Assembly (NCBI RefSeq): GCF_003918875.1
Contig: NW_025765163.1
Span: 62,001 to 126,000 of the forward strand
Direction: 5' to 3'
Source: Haliotis rubra
Lineage: Eukaryota
DNA length: 64,000 nucleotides
Positions 2,312-32,369 of this stretch are shown here, one piece after another. Under the pieces are notes generated by a model. That model had not been told where the DNA came from and did no database searches. It saw only the letters and a program-made list of their open reading frames with translations. The stretch's first letter is position 1, and every line of letters starts with the position of its first letter. The position numbers and the translations under genes are program-made.

Positions 2312-4888
2312 ATGACAAGGCACCCATTCATGACAGTTAAAAATTTGGTGAGTTAGAATAATTGTAACATTTCAGTGTTAATCATACACAACAAAACCAG
2401 AAGGGTCTATGCATAAAGTTTAAAAGTGTCTATAGTTTTATTCCTCAAGTCTGTGTTTCCTTTCAGTGTTTGATGCTGCCAGGAATAGCAGCAGGAATAG
2501 CAGCAGTGTCAGGTGAGAGTATGCGTTATCATGCATCTTAGAACCACCCTGCACATTCTTGCCTTCTTGTATACTCAATTAAATTAATAACGTGACACTT
2601 TTTAAATTGAATCCCACAATGAAAGTAAGGTGTATTTTATCATGACAATAGATGTGTATCCTGCTGCTATCATCCAGGTAACAAGACAGATGATGGAAAG
2701 TGGATTGCAGTCCTCCAGCGAAACCTTTTACACTCTAACTCTTTGATTAAGGTTGCACTTTGGAGTTTTCCTACTTGTCTGTGTACATGAATCCCAACAC
2801 ACGGGCGATCGCTAAGTTGATCACGTGACCGTTGATCGTTCCGCTTCACGCTTTTTTCACTCTTCAGGATCACATGTCGGTCGCAAAGGCCATGTTTAAA
2901 CAGCTTACATTCCATTGTGGTGTGAATTACTCACTCACAATTACCAATAATATTGGAGTTAGGTTTCTGATCTTATTTCATTGAATTTCACTTGTTGCAG
3001 TATTATAGCATTTCATGTACCTCCACGATAATGATGTCGCTGTTTACAACAGCCAGGTGACTGCATAGATGATTGCATTGGTAGTTGAGAGGCGAGATGA
3101 CAGTGTTGTCAGTAAAGATATTCACTTGGTATTCCTCAGTAAATTAGAAAATATAACATAAATTAACAAGGTATTAGTATCGATCAAGATAAATGTTTTA
3201 TTTGTTAATTGATGTTACCATTGCAGGTGCCGCCGAGGTTGACAGTCCCCAATGTGCTCGGTGGGATCGTGGTCTGTGTGTTGAATGTTACTACGGATGG
3301 TTTGGGCATCGGTGTCAGAGACAATGTGACAGACACTGCTGGCACACCGGGTGTTATAAACATACTGGGATCTGTGAACAATGTGTGCCTGGTAAACACG
3401 GCAGAGACTGTAACACTGACTGTCCTGACAACTGTAGACGGGATAGAGATGGGAGGGTGAACTGTGATCGGGAAGGAGGGGGATGCCTGGAGGGGTGTAG
3501 GGAGGGCTGGTGGGGGGACACGTGTAACAACCCATGTAATGTTAACTGTAAGACAGGGGCATGTCATCAAACATCAGGTCATTGTATCGGCGACTGTACA
3601 CGTGGGTGGCACGGACTGGCTTGTGACAAACGGTGTTCAGCTGGTTGTCGGGGCAACATATGCAGATGTGTTACAGGGGTATGTACGCATGGATGCGAGA
3701 GAGGCTGGTTTGGTGAAAAATGTACAGAGCGAAAACAACAAAGAGAATGCAGTTTCACGTGTAGAAGCCGTGAGTGTGATATGAATGGGAGGTGTTTAAA
3801 AGGATGCAAAAATGGATTCAGAGGCAGCACGTGTATCGAGCGATGTCCAGACAACTGCCACATTTGTGAACAAGACACGACGTCATGCACGACATGTGAA
3901 CGTGGATGGCAGGGACGTCTCTGTACCAACAGAAGTATCGCCCGTCACCATCCGCACAAAGGTCATCCAACATTCGAAGTGCTTGGCTCCCCGTCTGAAC
4001 CAACAGGTATGTATATCAACACTGACAATTATGGTAAGCAACGAGTCTTACCCAACTGAATGTTTTAGGGCCTAACTGATAACCACCTGAATCTATAAAT
4101 ATATTGTACTTTGAGGTGAGATGAGGTGAGGTGAGGTGAGGTGGGGTGAAATGGGGTTTACGTCGCACTGAAGAATATTTCGCTCATATGATGACGTGCA
4201 TGCGTGTGTATGTGTGGCTGCTTGTACTAGCCCAGACTTAAGCTGGTTTTATAGTGCTAGCTCACTGAGATACAATGCCGCAGTTAAGCATGAATACCCC
4301 ACTCAGACACATTATGGACTCCGAGTCGATCAGTCGTTGTTGCACCCATTAATGGCAAGTACCATATTTTAACGTCTTTTGGTATGACGCGGTCGGGGAT
4401 CGAACCCACGACCTTCCGCTCTCCGGGCGTACGCTCTAAACACTACACCACGGAGGCGGTTTATTGTACCTTGAAGGACCATTGGGCATTAAAGTAGTTC
4501 AGCTAAGATCTATATCCCGGTAATCAGAATTCAATATATCAATGATGTATGTGGATTTAACATAGAAATGACAACCAAACACTACGAATAATCCTTTGCT
4601 TGTTGAAGATTCGGATCCACTCTCTTTCTTTCAGGTGGTGCTACCGGCAGGGACAGTGGCAGCATATTGCTTCTGTTGGTGGCTGTGATCATCAGTGCCA
4701 TGTGCCAGACAGACCTTTCATGGTATTCCAATGAACTGTTCCGAATACAAGACACTTCACTGTCTACCTTACAGAAGTTACGGACTCAAGTAAAACGGTC
4801 CTGCATGCAGATTGCATGTCATGAGTATTCACTAGGTCAAGCGTTTGTAAATTGGCGGTTCCAAAGGCCGTCAATATCAGATCGTTAG
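2312..4888 (+). CDS. Gene A: multiple EGF-like domain protein (MEGF10/SCARF-like), about 371 aa; exons 2312-2347, 2467-2512, 3227-4006, 4635-4888
   Basis: Split signal peptide MTRHPFMTVKNL|CLMLPGIAAGIAAVS. A 780-nt exon of CxxGW(F/W)GxxC repeats follows. Last exon GGATGRDSGSILLLLVAVIISAMC... All junctions are GT-AG with phases 0,1,1, total 1116 nt in frame. The last exon is least certain. Confidence 0.85.
4113..4460 (-). mobile_element. tRNA-derived SINE (family 2, Meta-domain-like body, (CACCT)n tail)
   Basis: Minus strand begins ccgcctccgtggtgtagtg...ggttcgatcc (A/B boxes), then gtcataccaaaagacgttaaaatatggtac. Related copies at about 48007-48195 and 48494-48743; tail fragment at about 58310-58363. 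Confidence 0.8.
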
Positions 4889-8553: not shown

Positions 8554-10992
8554 ATGGTGTTGACTTGGATTCTGTTGATCTGTGTATCATTTAAAGTGGG
8601 GAGTAATGGTAGGTATACATGTACATATTACTTATATACACATTTGCAGATGGTTTCTTTTTTAACGCTGACACATTCATATAATTAATTGGCACGCTAT
8701 GTACAAACAGATTTGAGCAAATTCAGATTCTACATAAGAAATGAAAACTACTTGCTTGAACCATTGTTGTTTCAGGGGCTGTTGATGATATTTGCCATCA
8801 TATTCAAAGCTGTTGTTTGGATGAGGACAAACTCTGTCAAACTGACATATCGTCAGATATATGCAAAGTCAACTGCGGTAAATATCATGACTGTTCCTCA
8901 AATCACGTTCGACTTTCGAGAGTGGGGACTGAATGTCAAAACTATTGTACAACTGACCTTGAAAAATGCAATGTCGAATGTATGACTGGTTATTACGGTA
9001 GCAAATGCCATTTTGGGTGCAGTGATAGATGTGTCCAGCGAAAGTGCCACAAAGATAATGGCACTTGCAACTTTGGATGCAAGAGAGGCAGCTTTGGACA
9101 GACATGTGGTTCCACATGTAACCCTAACTGCAAGGATAGAACATGTCACAGGGGTAACGGAAGCTGCCTTCGTGGGTGTTCAGCTGGCTATTACGGTGCA
9201 GATTGTCTAAATAAATGTCCAACATCATGTCGGTATCGAGTCTGCGATGTGGAGAATGGGGACTGTCTTTTCGGATGCACTGAGGGGTTCTATGGGTCTG
9301 ACTGTCCACATTCTTGCCCAGACGATTGCTCTCTGTGTCATCCTGAAACTGGAAAATGCATCTTTGGTAGGTAAACCTCTGTAATATCTTTGGTAGGGAA
9401 ACCTCTGTAACATCTTTGGCAGGTAAACCTCTGTAACATTTTTGGCAGGTAAACCTCTGTAACATCTTTTGTAGGGAAACCTCTGGTAGAGAAACCCCTG
9501 TAACATCTTTTGGTAGTGAAACCTCTGTAATATCTTTGGTAGGGAAACATCTGTAACATGTTTGGTAAGGAAACCTCTGTTATATCTTTGGTAGGAAACA
9601 TCTGTTATATCTTTGGTAGGGAAACATCTGTAACATCTTTGGTAAGGAAACCTCTTTAGCATCTTTGGTTGGTAAACGTCTGTAACATCTTTGGTGGGGA
9701 AACCTCTGCAACATCTTTTGTAATAGGAATATATCATGGAATCAATCAGCACTTTGTGATTGATGATCAAACATCGTACCTTGTGTTTAATTCGCGAAGT
9801 CCCATTGTTGATTAAAGGTTCTGCATACACTTGTGGATAATGACAATAGCTCAATGTTTACTTCTGTTTTGTTTAAGAACACATTCCCGTGATCGAGGGT
9901 ATGTCTTGCACCACGAAGATGCTCGTTGTCTTTTGGGGGTCGGCAGGGGCATTCCTCCTCCTTGCTGGAGCGGCAGTGTGCATGTACAGGTAACTATTGC
10001 TTTATGCAGCATTTGCATTTGTCATGAAATCAGTTGGATCACTGTGTGATCATACCCTTCAATACCTCATTTAGATATTATTTACCATTCTATCACTGTA
10101 CTGATCCGAATTCCATTAAGATGAAATGTATTGTTTTTCCTACTCGTGACTTGAGACCTTCCGCTCAACCACAGTCAGTCCTGTTTAACTTATGCTATGT
10201 ATCAATCTAACCGTACGATTGCAATATATTGTAATGAGCTGATGTCCAAAATCTTATTATATTAGTTTAAAAAATGAACAGGTTGTCAGTCCGTCTTGGT
10301 ATATTTAGCATAACATAATATATTTTGTGTTTATTCACCACAGGAGTCAAGCTTGTAGTTTCAGTCTCAAGAAAAAGAAGAAAGGATTAGACACGCTGTT
10401 CATAGATGATAGAGCGCCAATGGACATTCCGAATAAATCCAGCCAGGACACCAGATCCAGCCACTATGAAGAAATCCTGTGTAGTGATGCAGACAGTCAC
10501 TTTCAGCATATCAGTAAAAGTACAGGCAGTATAAACCTGAGGACCTTGATCAGCACCATGAAGTACCCCAACCAATGCAGCAACTCCAAGCGTAAACGCA
10601 CCAGGGCCGATGCCGGGAGGAACGCTACGTCCCTGGTATCATCTGTACACACGCTCAACAATATTCCCTCGTTCTGGGTAGGATCGGAGACGGATGTTAA
10701 TGAAATGTCGGAACATCCTAATAAGGAGGAAGAACCTCTTGAAAAATCCCATCAAGCTTCCCAGAGGGAAGTCGTACGGTTTTCTGATGCCCTGGGTGGT
10801 GATGAAGCAGAAGGTTTGGATACATCATTGAAAGGAACGGAGGGAGAAAGCAAGTCAGAGTGTGACGATGTGTCAAGTGAGGACCATGGCAAGAGAGTCT
10901 ACATCTCCGCTATTTTCAATAAAAAGGATGACGCTACGATGGTCCATGTCCCATGTGATGGAATATATCCGGGACTGAAAAAGACAGACTAA
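8554..10992 (+). CDS. Gene B: type I membrane multi-EGF receptor with Tyr-motif tail, about 468 aa; exons 8554-8608, 8776-9366, 9878-9989, 10344-10992
   Basis: Signal MVLTWILLICVSFKVGSN. Cys-rich/EGF-like exon. TM MLVVFWGSAGAFLLLAGAAVCMY followed by a KKKKK basic patch. Tail carries SHYEEI, VYISAIF and IYPGL. Phases 1,1,2; 1407 nt in frame. Confidence 0.9.
9360..9720. repeat. About 26-bp minisatellite (atctttggtagggaaacctctgtaac), about 14 copies, starting inside the gene B exon-intron junction
   Basis: The unit recurs at 9360, 9386, 9412 and onward. The first unit contains the donor tttg|gtaggt. Confidence 0.95.
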
Positions 10993-12139
10993 ACTGCCCA
11001 GTTTACTTTCTAAAATATTTTATAGTGTACAGCTTGCAGATATTTGTGCTAAAGATGATTGCAACCCTCAAATCTCATTTCCTACCCCGAAGTATTTATG
11101 TTGATGAGTTATACAGCCGTTTCATCATGAAAATAATTATTATATTCGGAACGTTCCGACATGAGATGATCCCGTTGTGTTCCGTCAGGTTTCGCCTCTG
11201 TACCTATACCTTTCCAGTGATGCTTCTAAGCATCACAATTGTCACTTTTTTAATGCCATGTTCCTCTATCGTCTTACGATGGATGTTCAGTGTATATTCA
11301 GCCAGCTTTATTTTGATGTCGCTCAGATGATCCGCGATGATGCCATTAACGTTTTCTAAATAATATCTGCAATAGTTATGAACGTGATAACCACACGAGA
11401 AACTTGTACATGTTTGTATATGTGGTGCTTGAAGTTAGTTATAACTACATGTAAATTATTCAGCTGCGTCTGTATGGAATGTATACATATAAACATTGCA
11501 TTTGTGTTTCCATTGTTAGCATTTATGATACTTTTTATGTTCTAAATGCTATCTTACATTAATAAAATTCTTGTAAACTAGATATTTACGTTATAGTTAT
11601 GTTTGGACTTGGTAATGGTTTTTGAATTTATAACTAAAGCTGTTGTAGTAAATGTTTATTTTTTTTGACGAGTAACGATCATGCAATATATATATTTACT
11701 TCCTTTCACTATTTGTGTGGTTTCATTTTCGCTGCACGCATTAATCTGTTTGTACGTTTCAGGACATTATTTCAAGTGACATATCTACTTTTGTTTTCGG
11801 TAGTTTCTGTATAAATAAGTCAAACGAGAGGAGGAATTAAAAAGTACACCTCAGACAGGACATAGTAAATCAGTTTTGAATTCTTAAAGATTGTAAGCAC
11901 GTGTATGAGTGTAGTGCCCGACTATAGAGATGTTGGCATGTAGCTGGGAGGACAGCAGTGCGCCCAATAAAGGTCATTCTAGTAGGTTAACTGTTAGTCT
12001 CATATCTGCATATATATTGTCGTGAGGTTGGCAAAGACATGGTGGCCATCGTAGCAGTAGATACGTTCATCTCTGCCACCTGAAAACTGTATAAACCCAG
12101 TGTGTGGTGAGCAGACATTACAGTCTTAATGAAACGAAG

Positions 12140-13030: not shown

Positions 13031-13222
13031 TTACGTTATCAAACATGCATTGTCGACTTAGTTTATAGACTTTTCTCGCCAGGACTCGATTATATACAGG
13101 TCACCGTGAAATAGTTAGAACTGCATACCAACTATTTCGTGATCGCTTCCAAAATTCTCTCTGACACACTGAGTTTTAAACGTGCAACGAACGTGAGTCC
13201 AACCGCCACGAAAAGGGGACGA

Positions 13223-14795
13223 TACCCTATCCCTTGTGTAGGACTGACACCATACCCTAACCTTGTATGACTGACACCATACCCTATCCCTTGTAGGACT
13301 GACACCATACCCTATCCCTTGTATGACTGACACCATACCCTATCCCTTGTAGGACTGACACCATACCCTATCCCTTGTATGACTGACACCATACCCTATC
13401 CCACATAGGACTGACACTATACCCTATCCCTTGTAGGACTGACACCATACCCTATCCCTTGTAGGACTGACATCATGCCCTATCCCTTGTAGGACTGACA
13501 CCATACCCTATCCCTTGTAGGACTGACACTATACCCTATCCCTTGTAGGACTGACACCATACCCTATCCCTTGTAGGACTGACACCATACCCTATCCCTT
13601 GTAGGACTGACATCATGCCCTATCCCTTGTAGAACTGACACCATACCCTATCCCTTGTAGGACTGACACCATACCCTATCCCTTGTAGGACTGACACCAT
13701 ACCCTATCCCTTGTAGGACTGACACCATACCCTATCCCTTGTAGGACTGACACTATACCCTATCCCTTGTAGGACTGACACCATACCCTATCCCTTGTAT
13801 GACTGACACCATACCCTATCCCACATAGGACTGACACTATACCCTATCCCTTGTAGGACTGACACCATACCCTATCCCTTGTAGGACTGACACCATACCC
13901 TATCCCCTGACACCATACCCTATCCCACATAGGACTGACACTATACCCTATCCCTTGTAGGACTGACACCATACCCTATCCCTTGTAGGACTGACATCAT
14001 GCCCTATCCCTTGTAGGACTGACACCATACCCTATCCCTTGTAGGACTGACACCATACCCTATCCCTTGTAGGACTGACACCATACCCTATCCCTTGTAG
14101 GACTGACACCATACCCTATCCCTTGTAGGACTGACACCATGCCCTATCCCTTGTAGGACTGACACCATACCCTATCCCTTGTAGGACTGACACCATACCC
14201 TATCCCTTGTAGGACTGACACCATACCCTATCCCTTGTAGGATTGACACCAAACCCTATCCCTTGTAGGACTGACACCATACCCTATCCCTTGTAGGACT
14301 GACACCATACCCTATCCCTTGTAGGACTGACACCATACCCTATCCCTTGTAGGACTGACATCACCCTATCCCTTGTAGGACTGACACTTGTAGGACTGAC
14401 GCTATACCCTATCCCTTGTAGGACTGACACCATACCCTATCCCTTGTAGGACTGACACCATACCCTATCCCTTGTAGGACTGACATCATGCCCTATCCCT
14501 TGTAGAACTGACACCATACCCTATCCCTTGTAGGACTGACACCATACCCTATCCCTTGTAGGACTGACACCATACCCTATCCCTTGTAGGATTGACAACA
14601 AACCCTATCCCTTGTAGGACTGACACTATACCCTATCCCTTGTAGGACTGACACCATACCCTATCCCTTGTAGGACTGACACCATACCCTATCCCTTGTA
14701 GGACTGACACCAAACCCTATCCCTTGTAGGACTGACACCAAACCCTATCCCTTGTAGGACTGACACCATACCCTATCCCTTGTAGGACTGACACC
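13223..14795. repeat. 28-bp minisatellite (taggactgacaccataccctatcccttg)n, about 55 copies
   Basis: Head-to-tail units with no spacers; recurrent variants (catcatgccc, cactataccc, cccacatagg, caccaaaccc). Confidence 0.97.
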
Positions 14796-14889
14796 AGGGC
14801 TATAAGTACCGTGTCCTTCATTGGCAAATGTTGACCTTCCGGGCAGAGTGACAGTATTACTAACATAGGTGATGTGAACACACTGAAGA

Positions 14890-17248: not shown

Positions 17249-18611
17249 TAAGGCAAGTGAGTGTTCATAATTGTCTTTGTTCATCCAGCAGAAAATGGGT
17301 ACCCGATGGGATAAGTCATGTGACTACAACTTTCTAGCACCTACCAGGCAGCTTGGGTTAACCGGGGTAATAATGTGTTAGCGTCAAGAGCATGCTTACG
17401 AGCGTGGATATAAATATGCAGCATATGCGCCTGGCGATATTTCCTGACATCACGGTGTCACTTACCACTGGGGAGCACTGGTTTCAGGACCAGTCACAAG
17501 CACTGACCTCATGTTTGTACATGATTCATAAACATTCATCAGCATGGCGAAAATGAAACTAAATATATGACTTAATATAACTACCAATGCAAGGCACACG
17601 CTCTGACGACTATTTCCAGACATGAGAAACTGTACTCTCCCCAAAAAGAAACGCATGTGTATTTTCACGAATGTGATCTGCTAACACTAAAGTGAGATAA
17701 CACGTGTAATTCTGGATCAGTTGCAGCCAGAATACACAGTATTGAAGATCAAATGTCTGTTAACACTCCCTCTGGAGATCAATGATCGGAACCATGTGAA
17801 TCCTTAGGATTTCGTCTCTGTACCGAATAGCGGCTAAATTGCCCTGAAACGCACAAAGTGAAATTTCTGCGTGTAGTATATGTCGCCCCACATCAGACAC
17901 CGCCATAGCAGTCAACCTGGGTACCACAATTCTGTGCCTTCGAACGTAAACGTACATTAAAATTTCGGAAGATAACAAGCTAGCTAGACATACGTTTTAT
18001 ATTAAGATCCTAATCCCCGGCCCATGACCTACTAAATTAAATAAGACAAATTGAACTATAGAAATTCTAGTAAAACTAAAGCGAATGCGGACAAGTATCT
18101 TTCGAAACAGAACATTATATGTGATCAAATAATTTATGAATTATTTACAGTGGAAAATTGTTTCCTTTCAAAGCATGAGGTAATGAAAACGACAGATCAG
18201 GCAAACTTGGAGAAGGTAGGATGTGTGTTATAACATGGACCGAAAAGAATCATATGATACTTGTTTAACATCGAAGTCCTAACACTGAGTGTGTTTATAT
18301 AGATGTAAGATTCCTCAACATCTTGAGCCATGTGTTGTCCTATGTAGTGGTTATGTCTACTTGCAAGTTATTGTGTAAGTGTTTTGTATCCACTTTAACA
18401 GGAGCTTGATTGGGATTCCGTGGATCTGTGTATTTGTTTTTCCACGAGATGAAAATATACGTCAGCATTTACATGTCACTCTATTTCAAGTGGAAAATAT
18501 CGACGTTATACTCCAGTCACACTGAAAAGTATTGTTGTCACTTATGAATAACGTTTATATCTTCTCAACTATCCAGATGCATTACATTACTTTGATTTTG
18601 TTTAAGGAGCC

Positions 18612-21223
18612 ATGAATGACAGCGGGAATAGTCGGACACAGACACAGTCGCCTGTCCAGAATATCACAGTTGTCCCTCAACACGTTTCAGGTAGGGATGT
18701 TAGGAACGTCACTTAAACAGTGACTAAATGAGTATGGTTTTACGCCGCTTTGAGCAACATTCAAGCAATAGTGAGTGATTGAGTTTAGTTTTACGCCGCA
18801 CTCAGAAATATTCCAGCTATATGGCGGCGATCTATAAATAATCGAGTCTGGACTACACTAGATAATCCAGTGACCAACAGCATGAGCACGCAATTGGGAT
18901 ACGATGACACATGTCAACTAAGTCAGCAATCCTGACCACCCGATCCCTTTAGTCGCCTCTTACAGGTTACTGAAGATCAATTCTGATCCGTATCTTCACG
19001 GGTATTCCAGCAATATCACGGCGAGGGACTCGAAGAAGTGGGTTCACACATTGTACCCAAGTGGAGAATCGTACCGGAACTCAGGCAGCACGGGCGAATG
19101 CTTTGACCACCAGGCTACCCCACCGATCAACGTGAACTGAATTGTTTTAGCAATAGGTTGAAGCGGCGCCGTAAGTGCTGCTGGATATGACTATTATGGT
19201 ACCAAATGTCAGTGTAGTGTGAATGTGAAGTCACTTAATTAGGTCCACACATGTATTGACACTTCTACTGGTGGACTTTGGCTTTGCTTGGCAACTTGTT
19301 GTAGCTTGGCCACGGCTCTTTTGAGTCCGCTGCTCCATTGTCAGCAGACGAGTTCCTCCAGCTCCATGTCCAGCTCCTAGAAGTCTCACTCCAGACGTCT
19401 TTTCAGCAGACCTGGGTGCACTTTAGGAGAAGGGAACTGTCGTGGATCCTTCGGGATCATCCAATCCTCTACGCAAAAGACGAAGCTAAGGCGGCGTTGT
19501 TGGAGCAGGTGGACGAGCAGGGAGAGGAGAACGTCAATGTTGGGACTTTGTCATGACATCTTATTCCGACGGCGCGATTCAGCATGCGCATGTGTAACGA
19601 TGACGTCCTTTCCTTGTTTGTAGGGCAAGCCTCTCTGTCGCACAGCAATTTCCTGACAACGCCCAAAGTGTTGGTCACATTGACTCTTGTTTTTATTATT
19701 ATAGGATATTTATGTAGCGCACATATCCACACAACTAATACATGCTCAAGGCACCGGTATTTTCCACCTTGATCATTGGATGTCAATCTCACCGGCACAT
19801 CGTGGAGCATACAACTCTTGCCCATCCTTACGAGGTAAACATTCACAGCTGGGTGGACCGGGACACATAGCCACAGTACTTTGTCCCAAGTTGCTGTACA
19901 CGCAAGTGCTGTACACGCAACTAGGTGTTTGCACGTATACATGTGGCCACCATCTGGTCATATACCAACGGATTCGTGGGTTCTTTTGAATTTTTAGTAC
20001 ACGGGGTTGTGTACTGTATACTAGGGGTTGTGTACTGTACACTAGGGGTTGTGTACTGTACACTATGGGTTGTGTACTGTACACCAGGGGTTGTGTACTG
20101 TACACTAGGGGTGTGACAACACTGAAACAGCCGGCACACAAAGTTGACTCCAAGGTTTTTTACACCCGGTCACAGGTGGGCTCGTTCCCGACACGTCAAG
20201 CTGGCTGGATCAGAAGCCTGGCGCCTTAGACGGCTCGCCCATCATGCCCCACACTGACGGAACACTGACGAGGGCGATGAACGCTCTGCCGGTCCGCTTG
20301 TTGAATTAAAGAACAGGTTGTCCTTGACGGTGGAGCCGTGGTTTTGCGTGACTATTCGCTGAATCAGTTTTGGTATGTTTCAGAAGCCACACATTCCTGC
20401 ACAGCAGAGATACTCGCCGTGTTTTGGGGGTCTGCTGCAGTGTTCCTCCTACTTGCAGGAGCTGCGGTTATCATGTACAGGTAAGTTGGACCAATGTACA
20501 GTACCACTGTATGAAGATTCAATTCACATTCTAATCTTAGTCATTTGTAGTCACGTTCCTTCCCATGGATTATAACGTACTGAATATATGTTTACAGGTA
20601 TGTGTGTATCTTATACTAACCATGAACATTATTGTTCTAACAGAAATGGAATGTTTTCTTCCGCTGGGAAAAAGAAGAAAAGGGGATTAGATACACTGTT
20701 CGTACTCGAAGACACGCCAGCTCCTATACAACCTCCGGCCCGTCAGGAGTGGAGGTTAAGCACCTATGCTGACGTCATGAGTACTGACACCGCCAGTCAC
20801 TACCGTCGTATCAGCAGAAGTATGGGCAGTATCAACTTCAGACGGTTTAACGGCACCATGAAGGGTTCAACCTTGTACAATACTACAAGAAGCAAAATGA
20901 ACACACAAGCCGCTGTGGACATTACTATTTCAGTGGCGCCCCCAGACTTTAAAATATATAAACAGTCATCATATTGGTTAGGTACGGAGACGGATTTTGA
21001 TGACGTGTACGAATGTTTGCCAAAGAAAAGGGCAACACCTAGCAGATACCATGGAGGTCTGCGGCAAGATATTGTTCCGGAACCAGACGAAGAGGATGCA
21101 CCCTCAGAGGAACCACAAGGAGCCACTGGGATTCAACCTCAAAGGGAGACAAGGCATGTGCCGAGCAAATTTCTTTACATCTCCCCTGTGTTTAACGCTG
21201 GAAATGAACAATCAAACATATGA
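18612..21223 (+). CDS. Gene C: EGF-less single-pass membrane adaptor-like paralogue of gene B, about 251 aa; exons 18612-18690, 20384-20480, 20644-21223
   Basis: gccATG MNDSGNSRTQTQSPVQNITVVPQHVS|EATHSCTAEILAVFWGSAAVFLLLAGAAVIMYR|NGMFSSAGKKKKRGLDTLF... TM and tail blocks are clearly homologous to B; 756 nt in frame. TM and tail exons are solid; the first exon is less certain. Confidence 0.75.
18728..19126 (-). mobile_element. Family-3 tRNA-SINE with a family-1 retroposon (18771-19003) inserted in it
   Basis: The outer element matches 14890-15045; the inner one is flanked by the duplication attc(a/c)agcaata. Confidence 0.8.
19690..20250 (-). mobile_element. tRNA-derived SINE (family 4, CORE-like centre, (ATA)n tail) with an internal 21-bp tandem expansion at about 20000-20110
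   Basis: Minus strand ggggcatgatgggcgagccgtctaaggcgc..., central cttgggacaaagtact...gtccacccagctgtgaatg, tail gcgctacataaatatcctataataata. Second copy at about 37796-38280. Confidence 0.75.
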
Positions 21224-25312: not shown

Positions 25313-27383
25313 ATGATGGGGTCATGGTGGGTGCACATACTTATTCTGGTGAGCAAAATATTATTTGGTTGTTCTTGTCATTTGTAGTTTATCTTAAGAT
25401 ATACATGTAGATATACGTGGGAGTTTGTTTTTGTTGCTTAACGCCGAACATAGCAATAAATCAGCAATATGATGTCTGTCAGTGAATAATCGATCCGACA
25501 ATCCAGTGATTAACATTAAGAGCATCGTTTAACGCAACGGGAATACGATGACATATATCAGTATATATGGACTATGACTGCATCCCATTGTTGTACAGTT
25601 GTTGAAGACCAGTTGTAACCCGGATCTTCATGGGGGTGTTGGAGGTCAGATGGCGTATTTGTTTGTCTTCCTATCTGTCGCCATGTTTTACTCCGATAGT
25701 TATCACATCATGGCTTTATTTCTTCAGATTAAACAATCGTATATGTGATTTTTTCAGAGCACCGGACTGATATTCGGAACTATTTCACAAACAAGTGAGT
25801 GTAACGTCATTTACAATCTCATGTGCTGTCTTCACTATCATTCACAATGAAGCCTTCATAAACGTTGTTGAGCAATGAACATTTATATGTTGTTTCATTA
25901 AAAGTAAGTGGTATCTGCACATGTGTTATTACAGGTGGTTCCTGCAACGAGAGATGTTCCTACTGTCTTGGAACAAAGTGTCGGGAATGTCTCTACGGCT
26001 GGTATGGACGAGACTGTAATGACAAATGCAGTGAGTATTGCTGGCATGGTGGATGTGAGAGGATAACAGGACGTTGTTATCAGTGTGTTCCTGGAAGACA
26101 CTCAGGTGACTGTACCCAACTCTGCTCTCATCACTGCAGTGAGAATAGCAACGGACAGGTCAACTGTGACATAACGACTGGAAACTGTTTGGAGGATTGC
26201 GTGGAAGGAAGGTGGGGTCCACGATGCCAGTATAGATGTCCAGACAACTGCAAAGAAGACCTTTGCTACAAAGAGGATGGAGGGTGTCTGAGAGGCTGCG
26301 TTGATGGATTTCATGGTTCCATGTGTAAAGATCAGTGCTCCGAAGGTTGTTTGAACTCCACATGCCAATGGTTCACTGGCAAATGTACACATGGATGTAA
26401 GAACGGTTACCTTGGCTCCACGTGTTTGTACCCAATGGCCAGACACTGCCTCAACCAGGCTTACTATGCCGAACACCATACCGTGGCGTGTACTGATGGG
26501 TGTGACGATGGTTACACTTCAGAAACATGTAACGAAACATGTAACACTGGGTGTCTTAAATGTCACCAGTATTCAAAGACATGTTTGTCATGTATCTCCG
26601 GATTGTATGGCGACAAATGCCAAATCGAATGCAGTATGACATGCAATGAGTTGAACTGTGACATGTCAGGTGGATGTGACAAAGGGTGTACCCCGGGTTT
26701 CCGCGGTGTATATTGTAATGACACCTGTCCATACAACTGTTTGTCATGTAGTCAGCATACCGAGACGTGTACAGATTGTAAGGTGGGATATACTGGCCCT
26801 GAGTGTACGGAGGTGGACACATACAACGCGCTGGACGTCACAGGTAATGTTGCTACATGTATATACTGAAACATAAACTGGTAATAAACCACAGGAATGA
26901 GGCCGACATAAATGTGACTAATAGCAATATTTTTTTAACCCAAAAAGCCAGATATGCATTAATATTGTTGATGTATTCGGAGAGTATGGTGGGTTCACAG
27001 CATGAATTACCTGACAGTGTGTAATTTCGTCCAGATTAACGCATATCCATAGCATAAACTAATCGTTGTTTTAGAGTAACACCATTTGCAAACACCTCTA
27101 ACCTGCGTCCGGTTTAATGAGGTTTAACTTTTTCATGCCCTTTCGTAACATGCCTTTTTCAGTATTACTAAGCAATACATTAAATGTCATGAATAGTCAC
27201 ATGTTCTTGATAGTACTCACACCATGTGAAAATCGCACATTGCTCTCCACAACAGTTGAAATGTATGTTCACGTTCAGTCAGTGCCTGTTGCTTTTTCAG
27301 ACACAGTGTCACACAACGAGGCCTGCATCTTGCTAACACTAATAATGTGTACCGTAGCGCTCATCAGACATCCCGGTATATAA
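25313..27383 (+). CDS. Gene D: multi-EGF protein with GPI-signal-like C-terminus, about 354 aa; exons 25313-25348, 25758-25794, 25935-26843, 27301-27383
   Basis: Signal MMGSWWVHILIL|STGLIFGTISQT. 909-nt EGF exon. Terminal exon DTVSHNEACILLTLIMCTVALIRHPGI*. Phases 0,1,1; 1065 nt in frame. Confidence 0.88.
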
Positions 27384-30966: not shown

Positions 30967-32369
30967 AACTAGGCGTCATTGATAAAGGTCAATTGATACA
31001 TAACACACAAGTTTCTCAGAAATAATAGAACTGAGAGTGTCACCACAATGTTTAATATGTTGACAAACGTGACACATCGATATCGTGACATACACATAAA
31101 CAGCACTACCAAACATCAGTTGAATAGACTAACCTAACAAAATGAACATGACAAACATGAAGCACTCGGACAATCAATATCTTGTGTACCTCCTCGCACG
31201 TCCAAGACACGGGTACATCTTGTTCTCATGCTCCTGAACTCATCAAGTTCATAAAGAAAGCTTGTGGAATCGTATTCCATTCCTCTACTTCAGCTCTGCG
31301 GAGTCCTGGGAGATCCACTGGTGCTGGGTGACGTGTGTACACATGTCAACTGAGGTCATCCCAGGCATGCTCAATTGGGTATAGGTCTGGCGAGCATGCT
31401 GGCCACTCCATCCGCTCTACACCCTGCTGCCTAAGGAATTCCGTGACAATCCTGGCCCTATGAGGCCAGGATGGTACTGCTATAGGAGCCAGAATCTCGT
31501 CCCGATAACGCTCTCCGGAAAGATTACCGTCGACCACGTGCCGTGGAGTACGTCCAATAGGAGTTATCCCTGCCCAAACCTTAACCGAATCCCCGCCAAA
31601 TCGGTTATGCGTGGCCACAGTTGCATTTTTGATTCGCTCTCCATTGAACTGAATCTGTGAAGAGCACACGAGACCATTGACGTTGATTCCAGCGACCATG
31701 ATGTGTACTTCATCTCAAACGCTCCTGCCTGTGACGTAGTGTTTGGCGAACTGCAGGACGCCTACAGCGGAGTCCGGTTGCCTTCAAACGTCGACGAACG
31801 GTACCCTGTATGTCTTACATATCTGTCTGAAGATCTGCTGCGTTAAGGAATCTGTTACGTAACGCAGTGTTAATCTTGTGCCTATCATCTCGGACTGCAG
31901 TGACTCGGGGCGACCTGGTCAACGTGCATATTCCACGGATCCAATGGCTTGAAAGCTCTGCCACAGTCTACCAATAGCACTCTGACTCACATTAAAGCGG
32001 ACAGCAACCTGCAGCTGAGTTTGACCAGATTCCAAAAGGCCTATAGCCTGACCCCTTTCAGCACGTGACAAAAACGTCTCGTTTTAGCTGCGATTTCAAA
32101 CAGGTACCTGAACAATGAACGACATTGAAAAAGCATCAATGCATGTGTATTGTCCTCCACTTTACATGGATAGAGCGATGTACACGTGCAAATCATTGAC
32201 ATTAAGTGGCAGGTGGACTTCCATATTGAAAATTTGAAACGTTAAAGAACGTAATAATGACATTTCAACGGCCTGATTTGTTTTTCCATACTGTTAAGAA
32301 AGTTTGTAAAAACAACCTTTAAGAAACAGTGTTACCAATAGCTTGACTCTTCATTAATGACGCCGAGTA
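30967..32369 (-). mobile_element. Degenerate Tc1/mariner transposon, about 1.4 kb, TA-flanked
   Basis: Minus-strand transposase remnants: HTH region (AIGLLESGQTQLQVAVRFNVSQSAIGRLW...PGRPRVT) and DDE region (GGDSVKVWAGI, PHRARIVTEFL...MEWPACSPDLYPIEHAWD). Imperfect TIRs act(a/c)ggcgtcatt(g/a)at. The paralogous site at about 36966-36971 is empty. Confidence 0.9.

What the first reader, a model, noticed from the sequence alone, without database searches (positions are those of the whole stretch)
18607..21223. Gene C: EGF-less transmembrane adaptor derived from receptor B
Seen: no EGF exon and no gap between 11 kb and 20.4 kb, yet intact B-like TM and tail exons. They are preceded by an 84-nt exon with gccATG, two N-glycosylation sequons (NDS, NIT) and no signal peptide. 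A juxtamembrane Cys (SCT) is shared with B, and the tail has 8 Tyr. Established: a short ectodomain, TM helix and multi-Tyr tail is the layout of transmembrane adaptors such as LAT, PAG and SIT. Inference: an independently evolved type III adaptor for the adjacent tail-less EGF proteins. Alternatively, 18607-18690 is a stalk exon giving B a second TM/tail cassette, which is in frame from the 9366 donor.
Basis: partly seen in the sequence, partly recalled or inferred. Interest (0 to 1): 0.85.

Follow-up and report, generated by a model that had tools for sequence, protein, structure and literature searches.

The report
Abalone receptor paralogue without its ectodomain
Gene C is a real, conserved abalone gene, missing from the Haliotis rubra annotation, that arose as a full copy of the neighbouring multi-EGF receptor and then lost its EGF ectodomain, keeping a short stalk, the membrane helix and a tyrosine-rich tail; its proposed adaptor function is untested.

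Summary
The window is Haliotis rubra scaffold QXJH01001243.1 (0 mismatches). The three exons exist as described: stalk 18607-18690, TM 20384-20480, tail 20644-21223. They splice to a 251-aa ORF. Orthologues are RefSeq 'uncharacterized proteins' in H. asinina (251 aa), H. rufescens (LOC124111908) and H. cracherodii. H. rubra has no gene model here.

C is under purifying selection: dN/dS is 0.38-0.47, the rubra branch shows 11 non-synonymous to 16 synonymous changes, and all indels are multiples of 3.

- **EGF relic.** C's first intron holds a decayed EGF pseudo-exon (about 19180-19290), shared by three species.
- **Dead signal-peptide exon.** It lies at 18400-18456 (ATG to AGG, donor GT to AT). 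H. rufescens still uses this exon.

The stalk exon is the 5' end of the ancestral EGF exon, cut short by a new donor. So C is an old whole-gene duplicate of B (PEAR1/MEGF10-like) that lost its ectodomain. It is not a second cassette of B.

Type III topology fits H. rubra and H. asinina only. Service as an adaptor for D/E/F is unsupported. A B-C pairing (Lys versus Glu at the TM entry, shared Cys) is a better but untested lead. Transcription in H. rubra is unverified.

The parts
18400..18456 (+). Dead signal-peptide exon of C. It is homologous to exon 1 of H. rufescens C and to B's signal-peptide exon. The start codon is AGG here and the former donor GT is AT (18457-8).
   Evidence: alignment A2. 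This frame has no in-frame ATG after the preceding stop.
18607..18690 (+). Stalk exon, 84 nt, phase 1-1, with the ATG at 18612. It is homologous to the first ~140 nt of B's large EGF exon and uses the same acceptor (GAMND versus GAVDD). A new donor ends it.
   Evidence: alignment A4. The H. asinina exon is also 84 nt. The H. rufescens exon is 54 nt and uses a different donor.
18770..19130 (.). Dispersed SINE-like repeat inserted in intron 1. It is absent at this site in H. rufescens.
   Evidence: this stretch matches several unrelated places in L001; related dispersed-repeat copies match at several other window positions.
19180..19290 (+). Decayed EGF pseudo-exon relic, about one EGF repeat, with an in-frame stop and a 1-nt deletion. 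It is orthologous to relics in H. asinina and H. rufescens.
   Evidence: alignment A3. The H. rufescens relic matches B's EGF repeats at E 3e-10 and has two stops. All three C relics share a 6-nt deletion relative to B.
20003..20112 (.). 21-bp tandem repeat, 5.2 copies, in intron 1
20384..20480 (+). TM exon, 97 nt. It encodes the juxtamembrane Cys (SCTAE) and the TM helix. It aligns end to end with B's TM exon (9878-9989), differing by indels that net 15 nt.
20644..21223 (+). Tail exon, 193 codons plus the stop. It has 8 Tyr, including the ITAM-like YADV-x8-YRRI.
   Evidence: Tail pN 0.10 versus pS 0.22 against H. asinina.
8554..10992 (+). Parent-type gene B (LOC124266273, 468 aa, PEAR1-like). 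Its exons are signal peptide 8554-8611, EGF 8776-9366, TM 9878-9989 and tail 10344-10992.

Best explanation
C is a genuine protein-coding gene, restricted to Haliotis as far as the searched libraries show.

**Origin (shown).**
- C began as a complete tandem duplicate of a PEAR1/MEGF10-like multi-EGF receptor, the B type. That type has a signal-peptide exon, one large EGF exon, a TM exon and a tail exon.
- Before H. rufescens split from the H. rubra and H. asinina lineage, a donor site arose a few dozen nucleotides into the large EGF exon.
- The rest of that exon then decayed into intron.
- What remained was a short Ser/Thr-rich stalk, the juxtamembrane Cys, the TM helix and the Tyr-rich tail.
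- In the rubra/asinina lineage the signal-peptide exon then died. A Val codon in the stalk exon became the ATG now at 18612.
- The predicted H. rubra product therefore has no cleavable signal.

**Inferred from sequence rules.**
- The protein should insert N-out and C-in through its TM, by the positive-inside rule.

**Inferred mechanism, not shown.**
- C is an ectodomain-less membrane signalling or modulating subunit of the B-type receptor pathway.
- It would dimerise through the conserved extracellular Cys and the B-like TM, either with itself or with B. B has Lys where C has Glu at the TM entry.
- After Src-type phosphorylation it would present an ITAM-like YxxV-x8-YxxI, plus five further conserved Tyr, to SH2 proteins. 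Draper's ITAM does this for Shark/Syk.
For: **Identity of the window.** It is H. rubra QXJH01001243.1.

**Orthologues.** They have the same architecture: H. asinina XP_067678730 (251 aa, 78% identity), H. rufescens LOC124111908 isoforms X1 and X2, and a partial H. cracherodii model. The loci are syntenic, in the order B, C, D.

**Selection.**
- dN/dS is 0.38 (95% CI 0.24-0.58), 0.40 and 0.47. None of 2000 bootstraps reached 1.
- The rubra branch has 11 non-synonymous to 16 synonymous changes.
- Exon length differences are all multiples of 3.
- The chance that the tail ORF stays open at 20-40% neutral substitution is 0.011 to 0.0005.

**Origin from a whole B-like gene.**
- The signal peptide of H. 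rufescens C resembles that of H. rufescens B.
- A signal-peptide relic lies in the window.
- The stalk exon is collinear with the 5' end of B's EGF exon, including the acceptor.
- The EGF relic is shared by three species.
- The TM is 76% and the tail 31% identical to B's.

**No substitute signal peptide.** No other signal-peptide-like exon lies between 11 and 18.6 kb.

**Topology.** One TM helix, with flank charges -2 and +6.

**Pairing lead.** Both B and C keep the Cys. B has CTTK in three species and C has CTAE in three species.

**Draper precedent.** ITAM signalling by Draper is described in PMC6219719.
Against: - No transcript evidence was available for H. rubra. The RefSeq annotation of this scaffold calls no gene here, and no H. 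rubra protein with a C-like tail is in the 5.8-billion-protein collection.
- The 5' end of the H. rubra transcript is unknown. The 7-nt first coding exon of the H. asinina model is not conserved in H. rubra.
- The first ITAM-like motif ends in Val, not Leu or Ile, and there is no NPxY.
- The Glu lies at the TM boundary rather than in the core.
- In H. asinina, B carries an in-frame stop in its tail and is not called as a gene. C can therefore persist where B may be impaired.
- The AlphaFold model was uninformative (pLDDT 38.7).
- All functional statements rest on analogy.
Confidence: 0.7

Rival explanations
1. C is a type III transmembrane adaptor that supplies a signalling tail to the adjacent tail-less EGF proteins D/E/F.
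For: C has a short ectodomain, a TM helix and 8 Tyr. It lies next to D/E/F. D ends in a short hydrophobic C-terminal exon with a 5-residue tail.
Against: - D's hydrophobic segment has no charged residue and no similarity to C's TM. No matching exon was found for E or F.
- C's TM and Cys match B, not D/E/F.
- The H. rufescens orthologue has a signal peptide, so type III topology is not a family trait.
- No co-variation or expression data exist.
Confidence: 0.1
2. 18607-21223 is a second, mutually exclusive stalk/TM/tail cassette of the B transcription unit, spliced from the 9366 donor or from B's signal-peptide donor at 8611.
For: Both B donors are phase 1 and the 18607 acceptor is phase 1, so either junction is in frame. 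C has no working first coding exon of its own in H. rubra.
Against: - C carries remnants of its own signal-peptide and EGF exons, so it was a whole gene.
- In H. rufescens, C has its own translated signal-peptide exon and is a separate locus from B.
- In H. asinina, C is also modelled separately.
- B has its own stop and an AATAAA at 11561, where conservation with H. asinina ends.
- No product of about 464 aa with a C tail was found.
Confidence: 0.07
3. In H. rubra, C is a silent or dying gene remnant. It lost its signal peptide and promoter-proximal exon, and it looks intact only because the decay is recent.
For: The signal-peptide exon is dead. No gene model exists in the H. rubra annotation. 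Repeats have inserted into intron 1.
Against: - The rubra-specific branch shows 11 non-synonymous to 16 synonymous changes, roughly omega 0.25. That is stronger constraint than on the asinina branch, which has 31 to 17.
- The signal-peptide loss and the new ATG are shared with H. asinina, so they are old, yet the ORF and all splice sites remain intact.
- The ATG context gccATGa is good.
Confidence: 0.12

Closest known systems
PEAR1 / MEGF10 / Draper / CED-1 multi-EGF engulfment receptors. NCBI names the H. rufescens orthologue of gene B 'PEAR1-like'.
   Same: C descends from such a gene, as shown by the exon-by-exon homology to B. It keeps a single TM and a Tyr-rich tail with an ITAM-like pair, as in Draper (PMC6219719).
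   Different: C has no EGF repeats, only a decayed relic in an intron. It has no EMI domain and no NPxY. Its tail has no detectable relatives outside Haliotis: only 3 representatives matched among 1.84 billion proteins.
Disulphide-linked ITAM signalling chains: DAP12/TYROBP, FcR-gamma, CD3-zeta
   Same: C has a very short ectodomain with a membrane-proximal Cys, an acidic residue at the TM entry and an ITAM-like tail. The H. rufescens form is type I with a signal peptide.
   Different: There is no sequence homology. The tail is about 190 residues rather than about 40-110. The acidic residue lies at the TM boundary, not in the core. The first motif is YxxV. C is born from its own receptor family. 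No partner has been shown.
Transmembrane adaptor proteins LAT, PAG/Cbp, NTAL, LIME, SIT, TRIM
   Same: The layout is the same: a short ectodomain, one TM and many Tyr. In H. rubra and H. asinina there is no signal peptide. SIT and TRIM are also disulphide-linked through extracellular Cys (from my own knowledge).
   Different: C has no cytosolic CxxC palmitoylation motif and no YxN Grb2 motifs. There is no homology. The H. rufescens orthologue has a signal peptide.

Membership tests
MEGF10/PEAR1/Draper-type multi-EGF receptors | Several EGF-like repeats in the ectodomain | tested here: not met
   No EGF hit falls in any C exon. Only a decayed one-repeat relic, with a stop and a frameshift, lies in intron 1.
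MEGF10/PEAR1/Draper-type multi-EGF receptors | Descent from a family member (homology of the remaining parts) | tested here: met
   The signal-peptide relic, the stalk exon with its acceptor, the EGF relic, the TM (76%) and the tail (31%, E 4e-21) are all collinear with B. NCBI names the H. rufescens orthologue of B PEAR1-like.
MEGF10/PEAR1/Draper-type multi-EGF receptors | EMI domain at the N-terminus | tested here: not met
   Pfam finds no family in B (P0006) or in C.
MEGF10/PEAR1/Draper-type multi-EGF receptors | Cytoplasmic ITAM and/or NPxY | tested here: inconclusive
   YADV-x8-YRRI is conserved in three or four species. The first motif ends in Val, and there is no NPxY.
Transmembrane adaptor proteins (LAT/PAG/NTAL/LIME/SIT/TRIM) | Short ectodomain, single TM, no signal peptide (type III) | tested here: inconclusive
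   By sequence this is met in H. rubra and H. asinina. It is not met in H. rufescens, which has a signal peptide. Topology was not testable.
Transmembrane adaptor proteins (LAT/PAG/NTAL/LIME/SIT/TRIM) | Cytosolic juxtamembrane Cys (CxxC) for palmitoylation | tested here: not met
   The only Cys residues are Cys32, which is extracellular, and Cys183.
Transmembrane adaptor proteins (LAT/PAG/NTAL/LIME/SIT/TRIM) | Sequence homology to a member | tested here: not met
   The exhaustive profile-free search finds only Haliotis B and C proteins. Pfam finds nothing.
ITAM signalling chains (DAP12, FcR-gamma, CD3-zeta) | Membrane-proximal extracellular Cys forming disulphide dimers | not testable with these tools
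   The Cys is present and invariant in B and C of all species. Disulphide formation needs non-reducing gels.
ITAM signalling chains (DAP12, FcR-gamma, CD3-zeta) | Acidic TM residue pairing with a basic TM residue of a partner receptor | tested here: inconclusive
   C has Glu and B has Lys at the same TM-entry position in three species each. The position is at the boundary, not the core, and pairing is untested.
ITAM signalling chains (DAP12, FcR-gamma, CD3-zeta) | Canonical ITAM, YxxL/I-x6-8-YxxL/I | tested here: inconclusive
   The motif is YADV-x8-YRRI. The spacing is canonical, but the first +3 residue is Val.

The most novel reading that the evidence does not exclude
C is an invertebrate, independently evolved counterpart of DAP12 and FcR-gamma. 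It would be an ITAM-bearing signalling chain born from its own receptor gene by ectodomain loss. It would pair with receptor B through the shared juxtamembrane Cys and complementary Lys/Glu charges at the TM entry. That pairing would restore the second ITAM tyrosine that B has replaced by Phe. This would be a concrete example of how receptor-adaptor pairs can originate. The lineage would also have switched from signal-peptide to signal-anchor insertion.
Probability: 0.15. Interest if true: 0.75.

Novelty: new variant of a known kind. Interest (0 to 1): 0.42.

Why it matters
- **Annotation.** It adds an unannotated, selectively constrained gene to the H. rubra genome.
- **A traceable route of gene birth.** It documents, exon by exon, how a signalling-tail-only membrane protein arises from a full receptor. 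A cryptic donor truncates the ectodomain exon, the remainder decays in the intron, and later the signal peptide is lost and the start codon moves.
- **Possible wider relevance.** The origin of short ITAM adaptor chains is an open question. If C pairs with B, it would be a tractable natural example. It would also bear on haemocyte recognition and engulfment signalling in a farmed mollusc.
- **Limit.** Without expression and interaction data, it remains an interesting but ordinary case of domain loss in an expanded gene family.

Tried and rejected
- **Pfam.** The scan of B, C, D and A gave nothing useful: only a sub-threshold DUF4605 hit on the TM and a sub-threshold teneurin-EGF hit on A.
- **PDB sequence search.** The search with B found no hits.
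- **AlphaFold2.** The model of the H. asinina orthologue, built on a 7-row alignment, had pLDDT 38.7 and showed only the TM helix. It says nothing about order or disorder in the tail.
- **Signal-peptide search by tblastn.** Searching the window with the H. rufescens signal peptide found nothing significant. The relic was found only by reading frames and aligning DNA.
- **Signal-peptide search by exon scan.** A scan of 11-18.6 kb for any ATG plus hydrophobic core plus phase-1 donor found none.
- **Transcript evidence.** The one Logan contig (DRR299178, L003) still contains the intron, so it does not prove splicing.
- **Look-up failure.** P0002 is not on record for locus look-up. Isoform X1 was used instead.
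- **H. asinina first exon.** The 7-nt first coding exon is not conserved in H. rubra, so it cannot locate the H. rubra 5' end.
- **Literature.** Searches found nothing on this gene or on EGF-less MEGF/PEAR1 paralogues in molluscs.
- **GC skew at 12-16 kb.** I considered a minus-strand gene as the cause. It is a 28-bp minisatellite.
Full report
**What the window is.**

The window is a stretch of Haliotis rubra scaffold QXJH01001243.1 (GCA_003918875.1). Locus L004, fetched through gene B's protein, matches the window at all 20,992 overlapping bases.

The window holds a tandem cluster of multi-EGF genes, all found by tblastn.
- A: EGF exon at 3193-4059.
- B: 8554-10992.
- D, E and F: EGF exons at about 25.9, 33.5 and 38.7 kb.
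- Further members at about 42.7, 53.5 and 59.4-60.4 kb; the last is on the minus strand.

B is RefSeq LOC124266273 (468 aa). NCBI names its H. rufescens orthologue 'platelet endothelial aggregation receptor 1-like'.

**Check of the observation.**

The three exons are there with good splice sites.

| Exon | Coordinates | Length | Notes |
|---|---|---|---|
| Stalk | 18607-18690 | 84 nt | Phase 1-1, ATG at 18612 |
| TM | 20384-20480 | 97 nt | Donor GT at 20481-2 |
| Tail | 20644-21223 | 580 nt | Stop at 21221-3 |

- The spliced ORF is 251 aa.
- It has NDS and NIT sequons and no N-terminal hydrophobic stretch.
- It has one TM helix at residues 36-58, with a -2 N flank and a +6 C flank.
- Cys32 lies in SCTAE, and the tail has eight Tyr.
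- No N run and no intact EGF exon lies between B and the TM exon.
- C's TM is 76% and its tail 31% identical to B's (E 4e-21).
- The 9366 donor is in frame with 18607.

**C is a conserved gene.**

A search of 5.8 billion proteins found three relatives in the searched length range.
- H. asinina XP_067678730: 251 aa, 78% identity, full length.
- H. rufescens LOC124111908: isoform X2 is 271 aa and X1 is 301 aa. A partial H. cracherodii model sits in the same cluster.
- A Logan contig of an H. rufescens-like species.

An exhaustive HMMER pass over 1.84 billion representatives with the tail exon found only these C proteins and H. rufescens B. On the databases searched, the tail appears restricted to Haliotis.

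The H. asinina and H. rufescens loci are syntenic, in the order B, C, D-like.

Selection tests all point to constraint.
- Codon alignments give dN/dS of 0.38 (rubra-asinina, 95% CI 0.24-0.58), 0.40 (rubra-rufescens) and 0.47 (asinina-rufescens). None of 2000 bootstraps reached 1.
- With H. rufescens as outgroup, the rubra branch carries 11 non-synonymous and 16 synonymous changes. The asinina branch carries 31 and 17. The H. rubra copy is therefore at least as constrained as the others.
- All exon length differences are multiples of three: 84 versus 54, 97 versus 103, and 580, 568, 583 and 601.
- A 192-codon ORF would stay open under 20-40% neutral substitution with probability 0.011 to 0.0005.

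**How C arose.**

Four observations show that C was once a complete B-like gene.

1. **Signal peptide.** H. rufescens C starts with a signal peptide, MDLIWIMYFCLTLVLAQ. It resembles that of H. rufescens B, MDLTWILLIYSSL.
2. **Dead signal-peptide exon.** The window keeps the homologue of that exon at 18400-18456. The ATG is AGG here (AGA in H. asinina). The donor GT is AT. The frame has no ATG after the preceding stop.
3. **Stalk exon.** Its acceptor and first codons align with the acceptor and first codons of B's large EGF exon (GAMND versus GAVDD). Collinearity continues to the donor. The stalk exon is therefore the 5' end of the ancestral EGF exon, cut short by a new donor.
   - H. rufescens uses a different donor 30 nt upstream, giving a 54-nt exon. 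That is again in frame.
4. **EGF relic.** Downstream in the intron, all three species keep a relic of one EGF repeat.
   - In H. rufescens it is L002:10493-10645. It matches B's repeats at E 3e-10 and carries two in-frame stops.
   - In the window it lies at about 19180-19290. It has a stop and a 1-nt deletion shared with H. asinina.
   - All three relics share a 6-nt deletion relative to B.

The ectodomain loss therefore predates the split of these lineages.

In H. rubra a dispersed SINE-like repeat (about 18770-19130) and a 21-bp tandem repeat (20003-20112) have also entered this intron.

**Signal peptide and topology.**

H. rubra and H. asinina share both the loss of the signal-peptide start codon and an ATG in the stalk exon. 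H. rufescens has GTG (Val) at that position.

A scan of 11-18.6 kb for any ATG plus hydrophobic core plus phase-1 donor found no substitute signal-peptide exon. B's own exon would pass the scan's thresholds.

The short, net-negative N-terminus and the KKKKR cluster after the TM predict N-out, C-in insertion. This is inference from the positive-inside rule.

The trait is lineage-specific, because the H. rufescens orthologue is a conventional type I protein.

The 5' end of the H. rubra transcript is unknown. The H. asinina model's 7-nt first coding exon (ATGGATG|gt) is not conserved in H. rubra.

**Is C part of B?**

The evidence against it is as follows.
- C carries its own signal-peptide and EGF remnants.
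- H. rufescens C has its own translated first exon and is a separate locus from B.
- B ends in its own stop, with an AATAAA at 11561. Conservation with H. asinina stops at about 11530.
- A search that would have admitted a chimera of about 464 aa found none.

**Likely function.**

Nothing here is shown experimentally.

Blocks conserved between the B and C tails are KKKK(R/K)GLDTLF, the Y..(V/I)-x8-(Y/F)..I pair, GSIN(F/L)R, W(L/V)G(T/S)E and YIS.(V/I)FN.
- C has YADV-x8-YRRI in all species.
- B has YEEI-x8-FQHI. Its second Tyr is Phe, in agreement with scan note s1-333118.
- Seven of C's eight tail Tyr are invariant among the H. rubra, H. asinina and H. rufescens copies.

Draper, a family member, signals through an ITAM that Src42A phosphorylates and that the Syk-type kinase Shark binds. 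The same paper replaced Draper's ectodomain with an artificial FRB/FKBP ligand pair in a synthetic receptor (PMC6219719).

C keeps B's juxtamembrane Cys and a near-identical TM. At the TM entry B has Lys (CTTK, three species) where C has Glu (CTAE, three species).

The most economical hypothesis is this: C is an ectodomain-less signalling or modulating subunit that homodimerises, or pairs with B. It resembles DAP12 and FcR-gamma more than LAT and PAG, because it has no cytosolic palmitoylation Cys.

Pairing with D/E/F has no support.
- D ends in a short hydrophobic exon (27299-27383) without charge and without similarity to C.
- No counterpart of that exon was found for E or F.

One caution for the B-C idea: H. 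asinina B has an in-frame TGA in its tail (L001:3264) and is not called as a gene there, yet C persists.

**Weak points.**
- There is no transcript evidence for H. rubra.
- The RefSeq annotation of this scaffold has no model at C.
- The Logan contig is unspliced.
- Pfam, the PDB search and AlphaFold added nothing.

**Verdict.**

C is an independent, conserved, EGF-less derivative of a B-type receptor, and it is unannotated in H. rubra. Its role as an adaptor, and above all as an adaptor for D/E/F, is unproven. It is a new variant of a known kind and of moderate interest.

Noticed in passing
window 13222-14796: A 28-bp minisatellite of about 56 copies. It accounts for the negative GC skew at 12-16 kb. 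No gene lies there.
   Followed up: yes
window 27299-27383: Gene D has a short last exon after the donor at about 26843. It encodes a 16-residue hydrophobic C-terminus followed by RHPGI, which could be a TM with a 5-residue tail or a GPI signal. No similar exon was found downstream of E or F.
   Followed up: partly
L001:3264-3266 (H. asinina B tail): An in-frame TGA replaces the conserved Trp of the FWVGSE block in H. asinina B. The sequence after it is still well conserved, and no gene is called for B in that locus. This could be a recent nonsense allele, a pseudogene or an assembly error.
   Followed up: partly
window 18577-18615: If the stalk exon were read through from upstream instead of being spliced, a 12-codon upstream ORF would end in a TGA that overlaps C's ATG (ATGA). 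Two other upstream ATGs, at 18473 and 18544, open ORFs of 24 and 23 codons.
   Followed up: no
window 31346-31699 (-) and 17760-17978 (-): The 31346-31699 ORF looks like a Tc1/mariner-type transposase remnant: it scores DDE_3 at E 6e-5, below the gathering score. The 17760-17978 ORF shares the RYRDEIL motif but has no Pfam hit.
   Followed up: partly
L002:10367-10420 versus window 18607-18690: The stalk exon uses different donor sites in H. rufescens (54 nt) and in H. rubra and H. asinina (84 nt). Each lineage lacks the GT that the other uses, and both keep phase 1.
   Followed up: yes
window 18150-18260: A block upstream of the dead signal-peptide exon is highly conserved between H. rubra and H. 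asinina. It contains two donor-like sites (GAG|GTAATG and AAG|GTAGGA). It is a candidate non-coding first exon or promoter of C.
   Followed up: no
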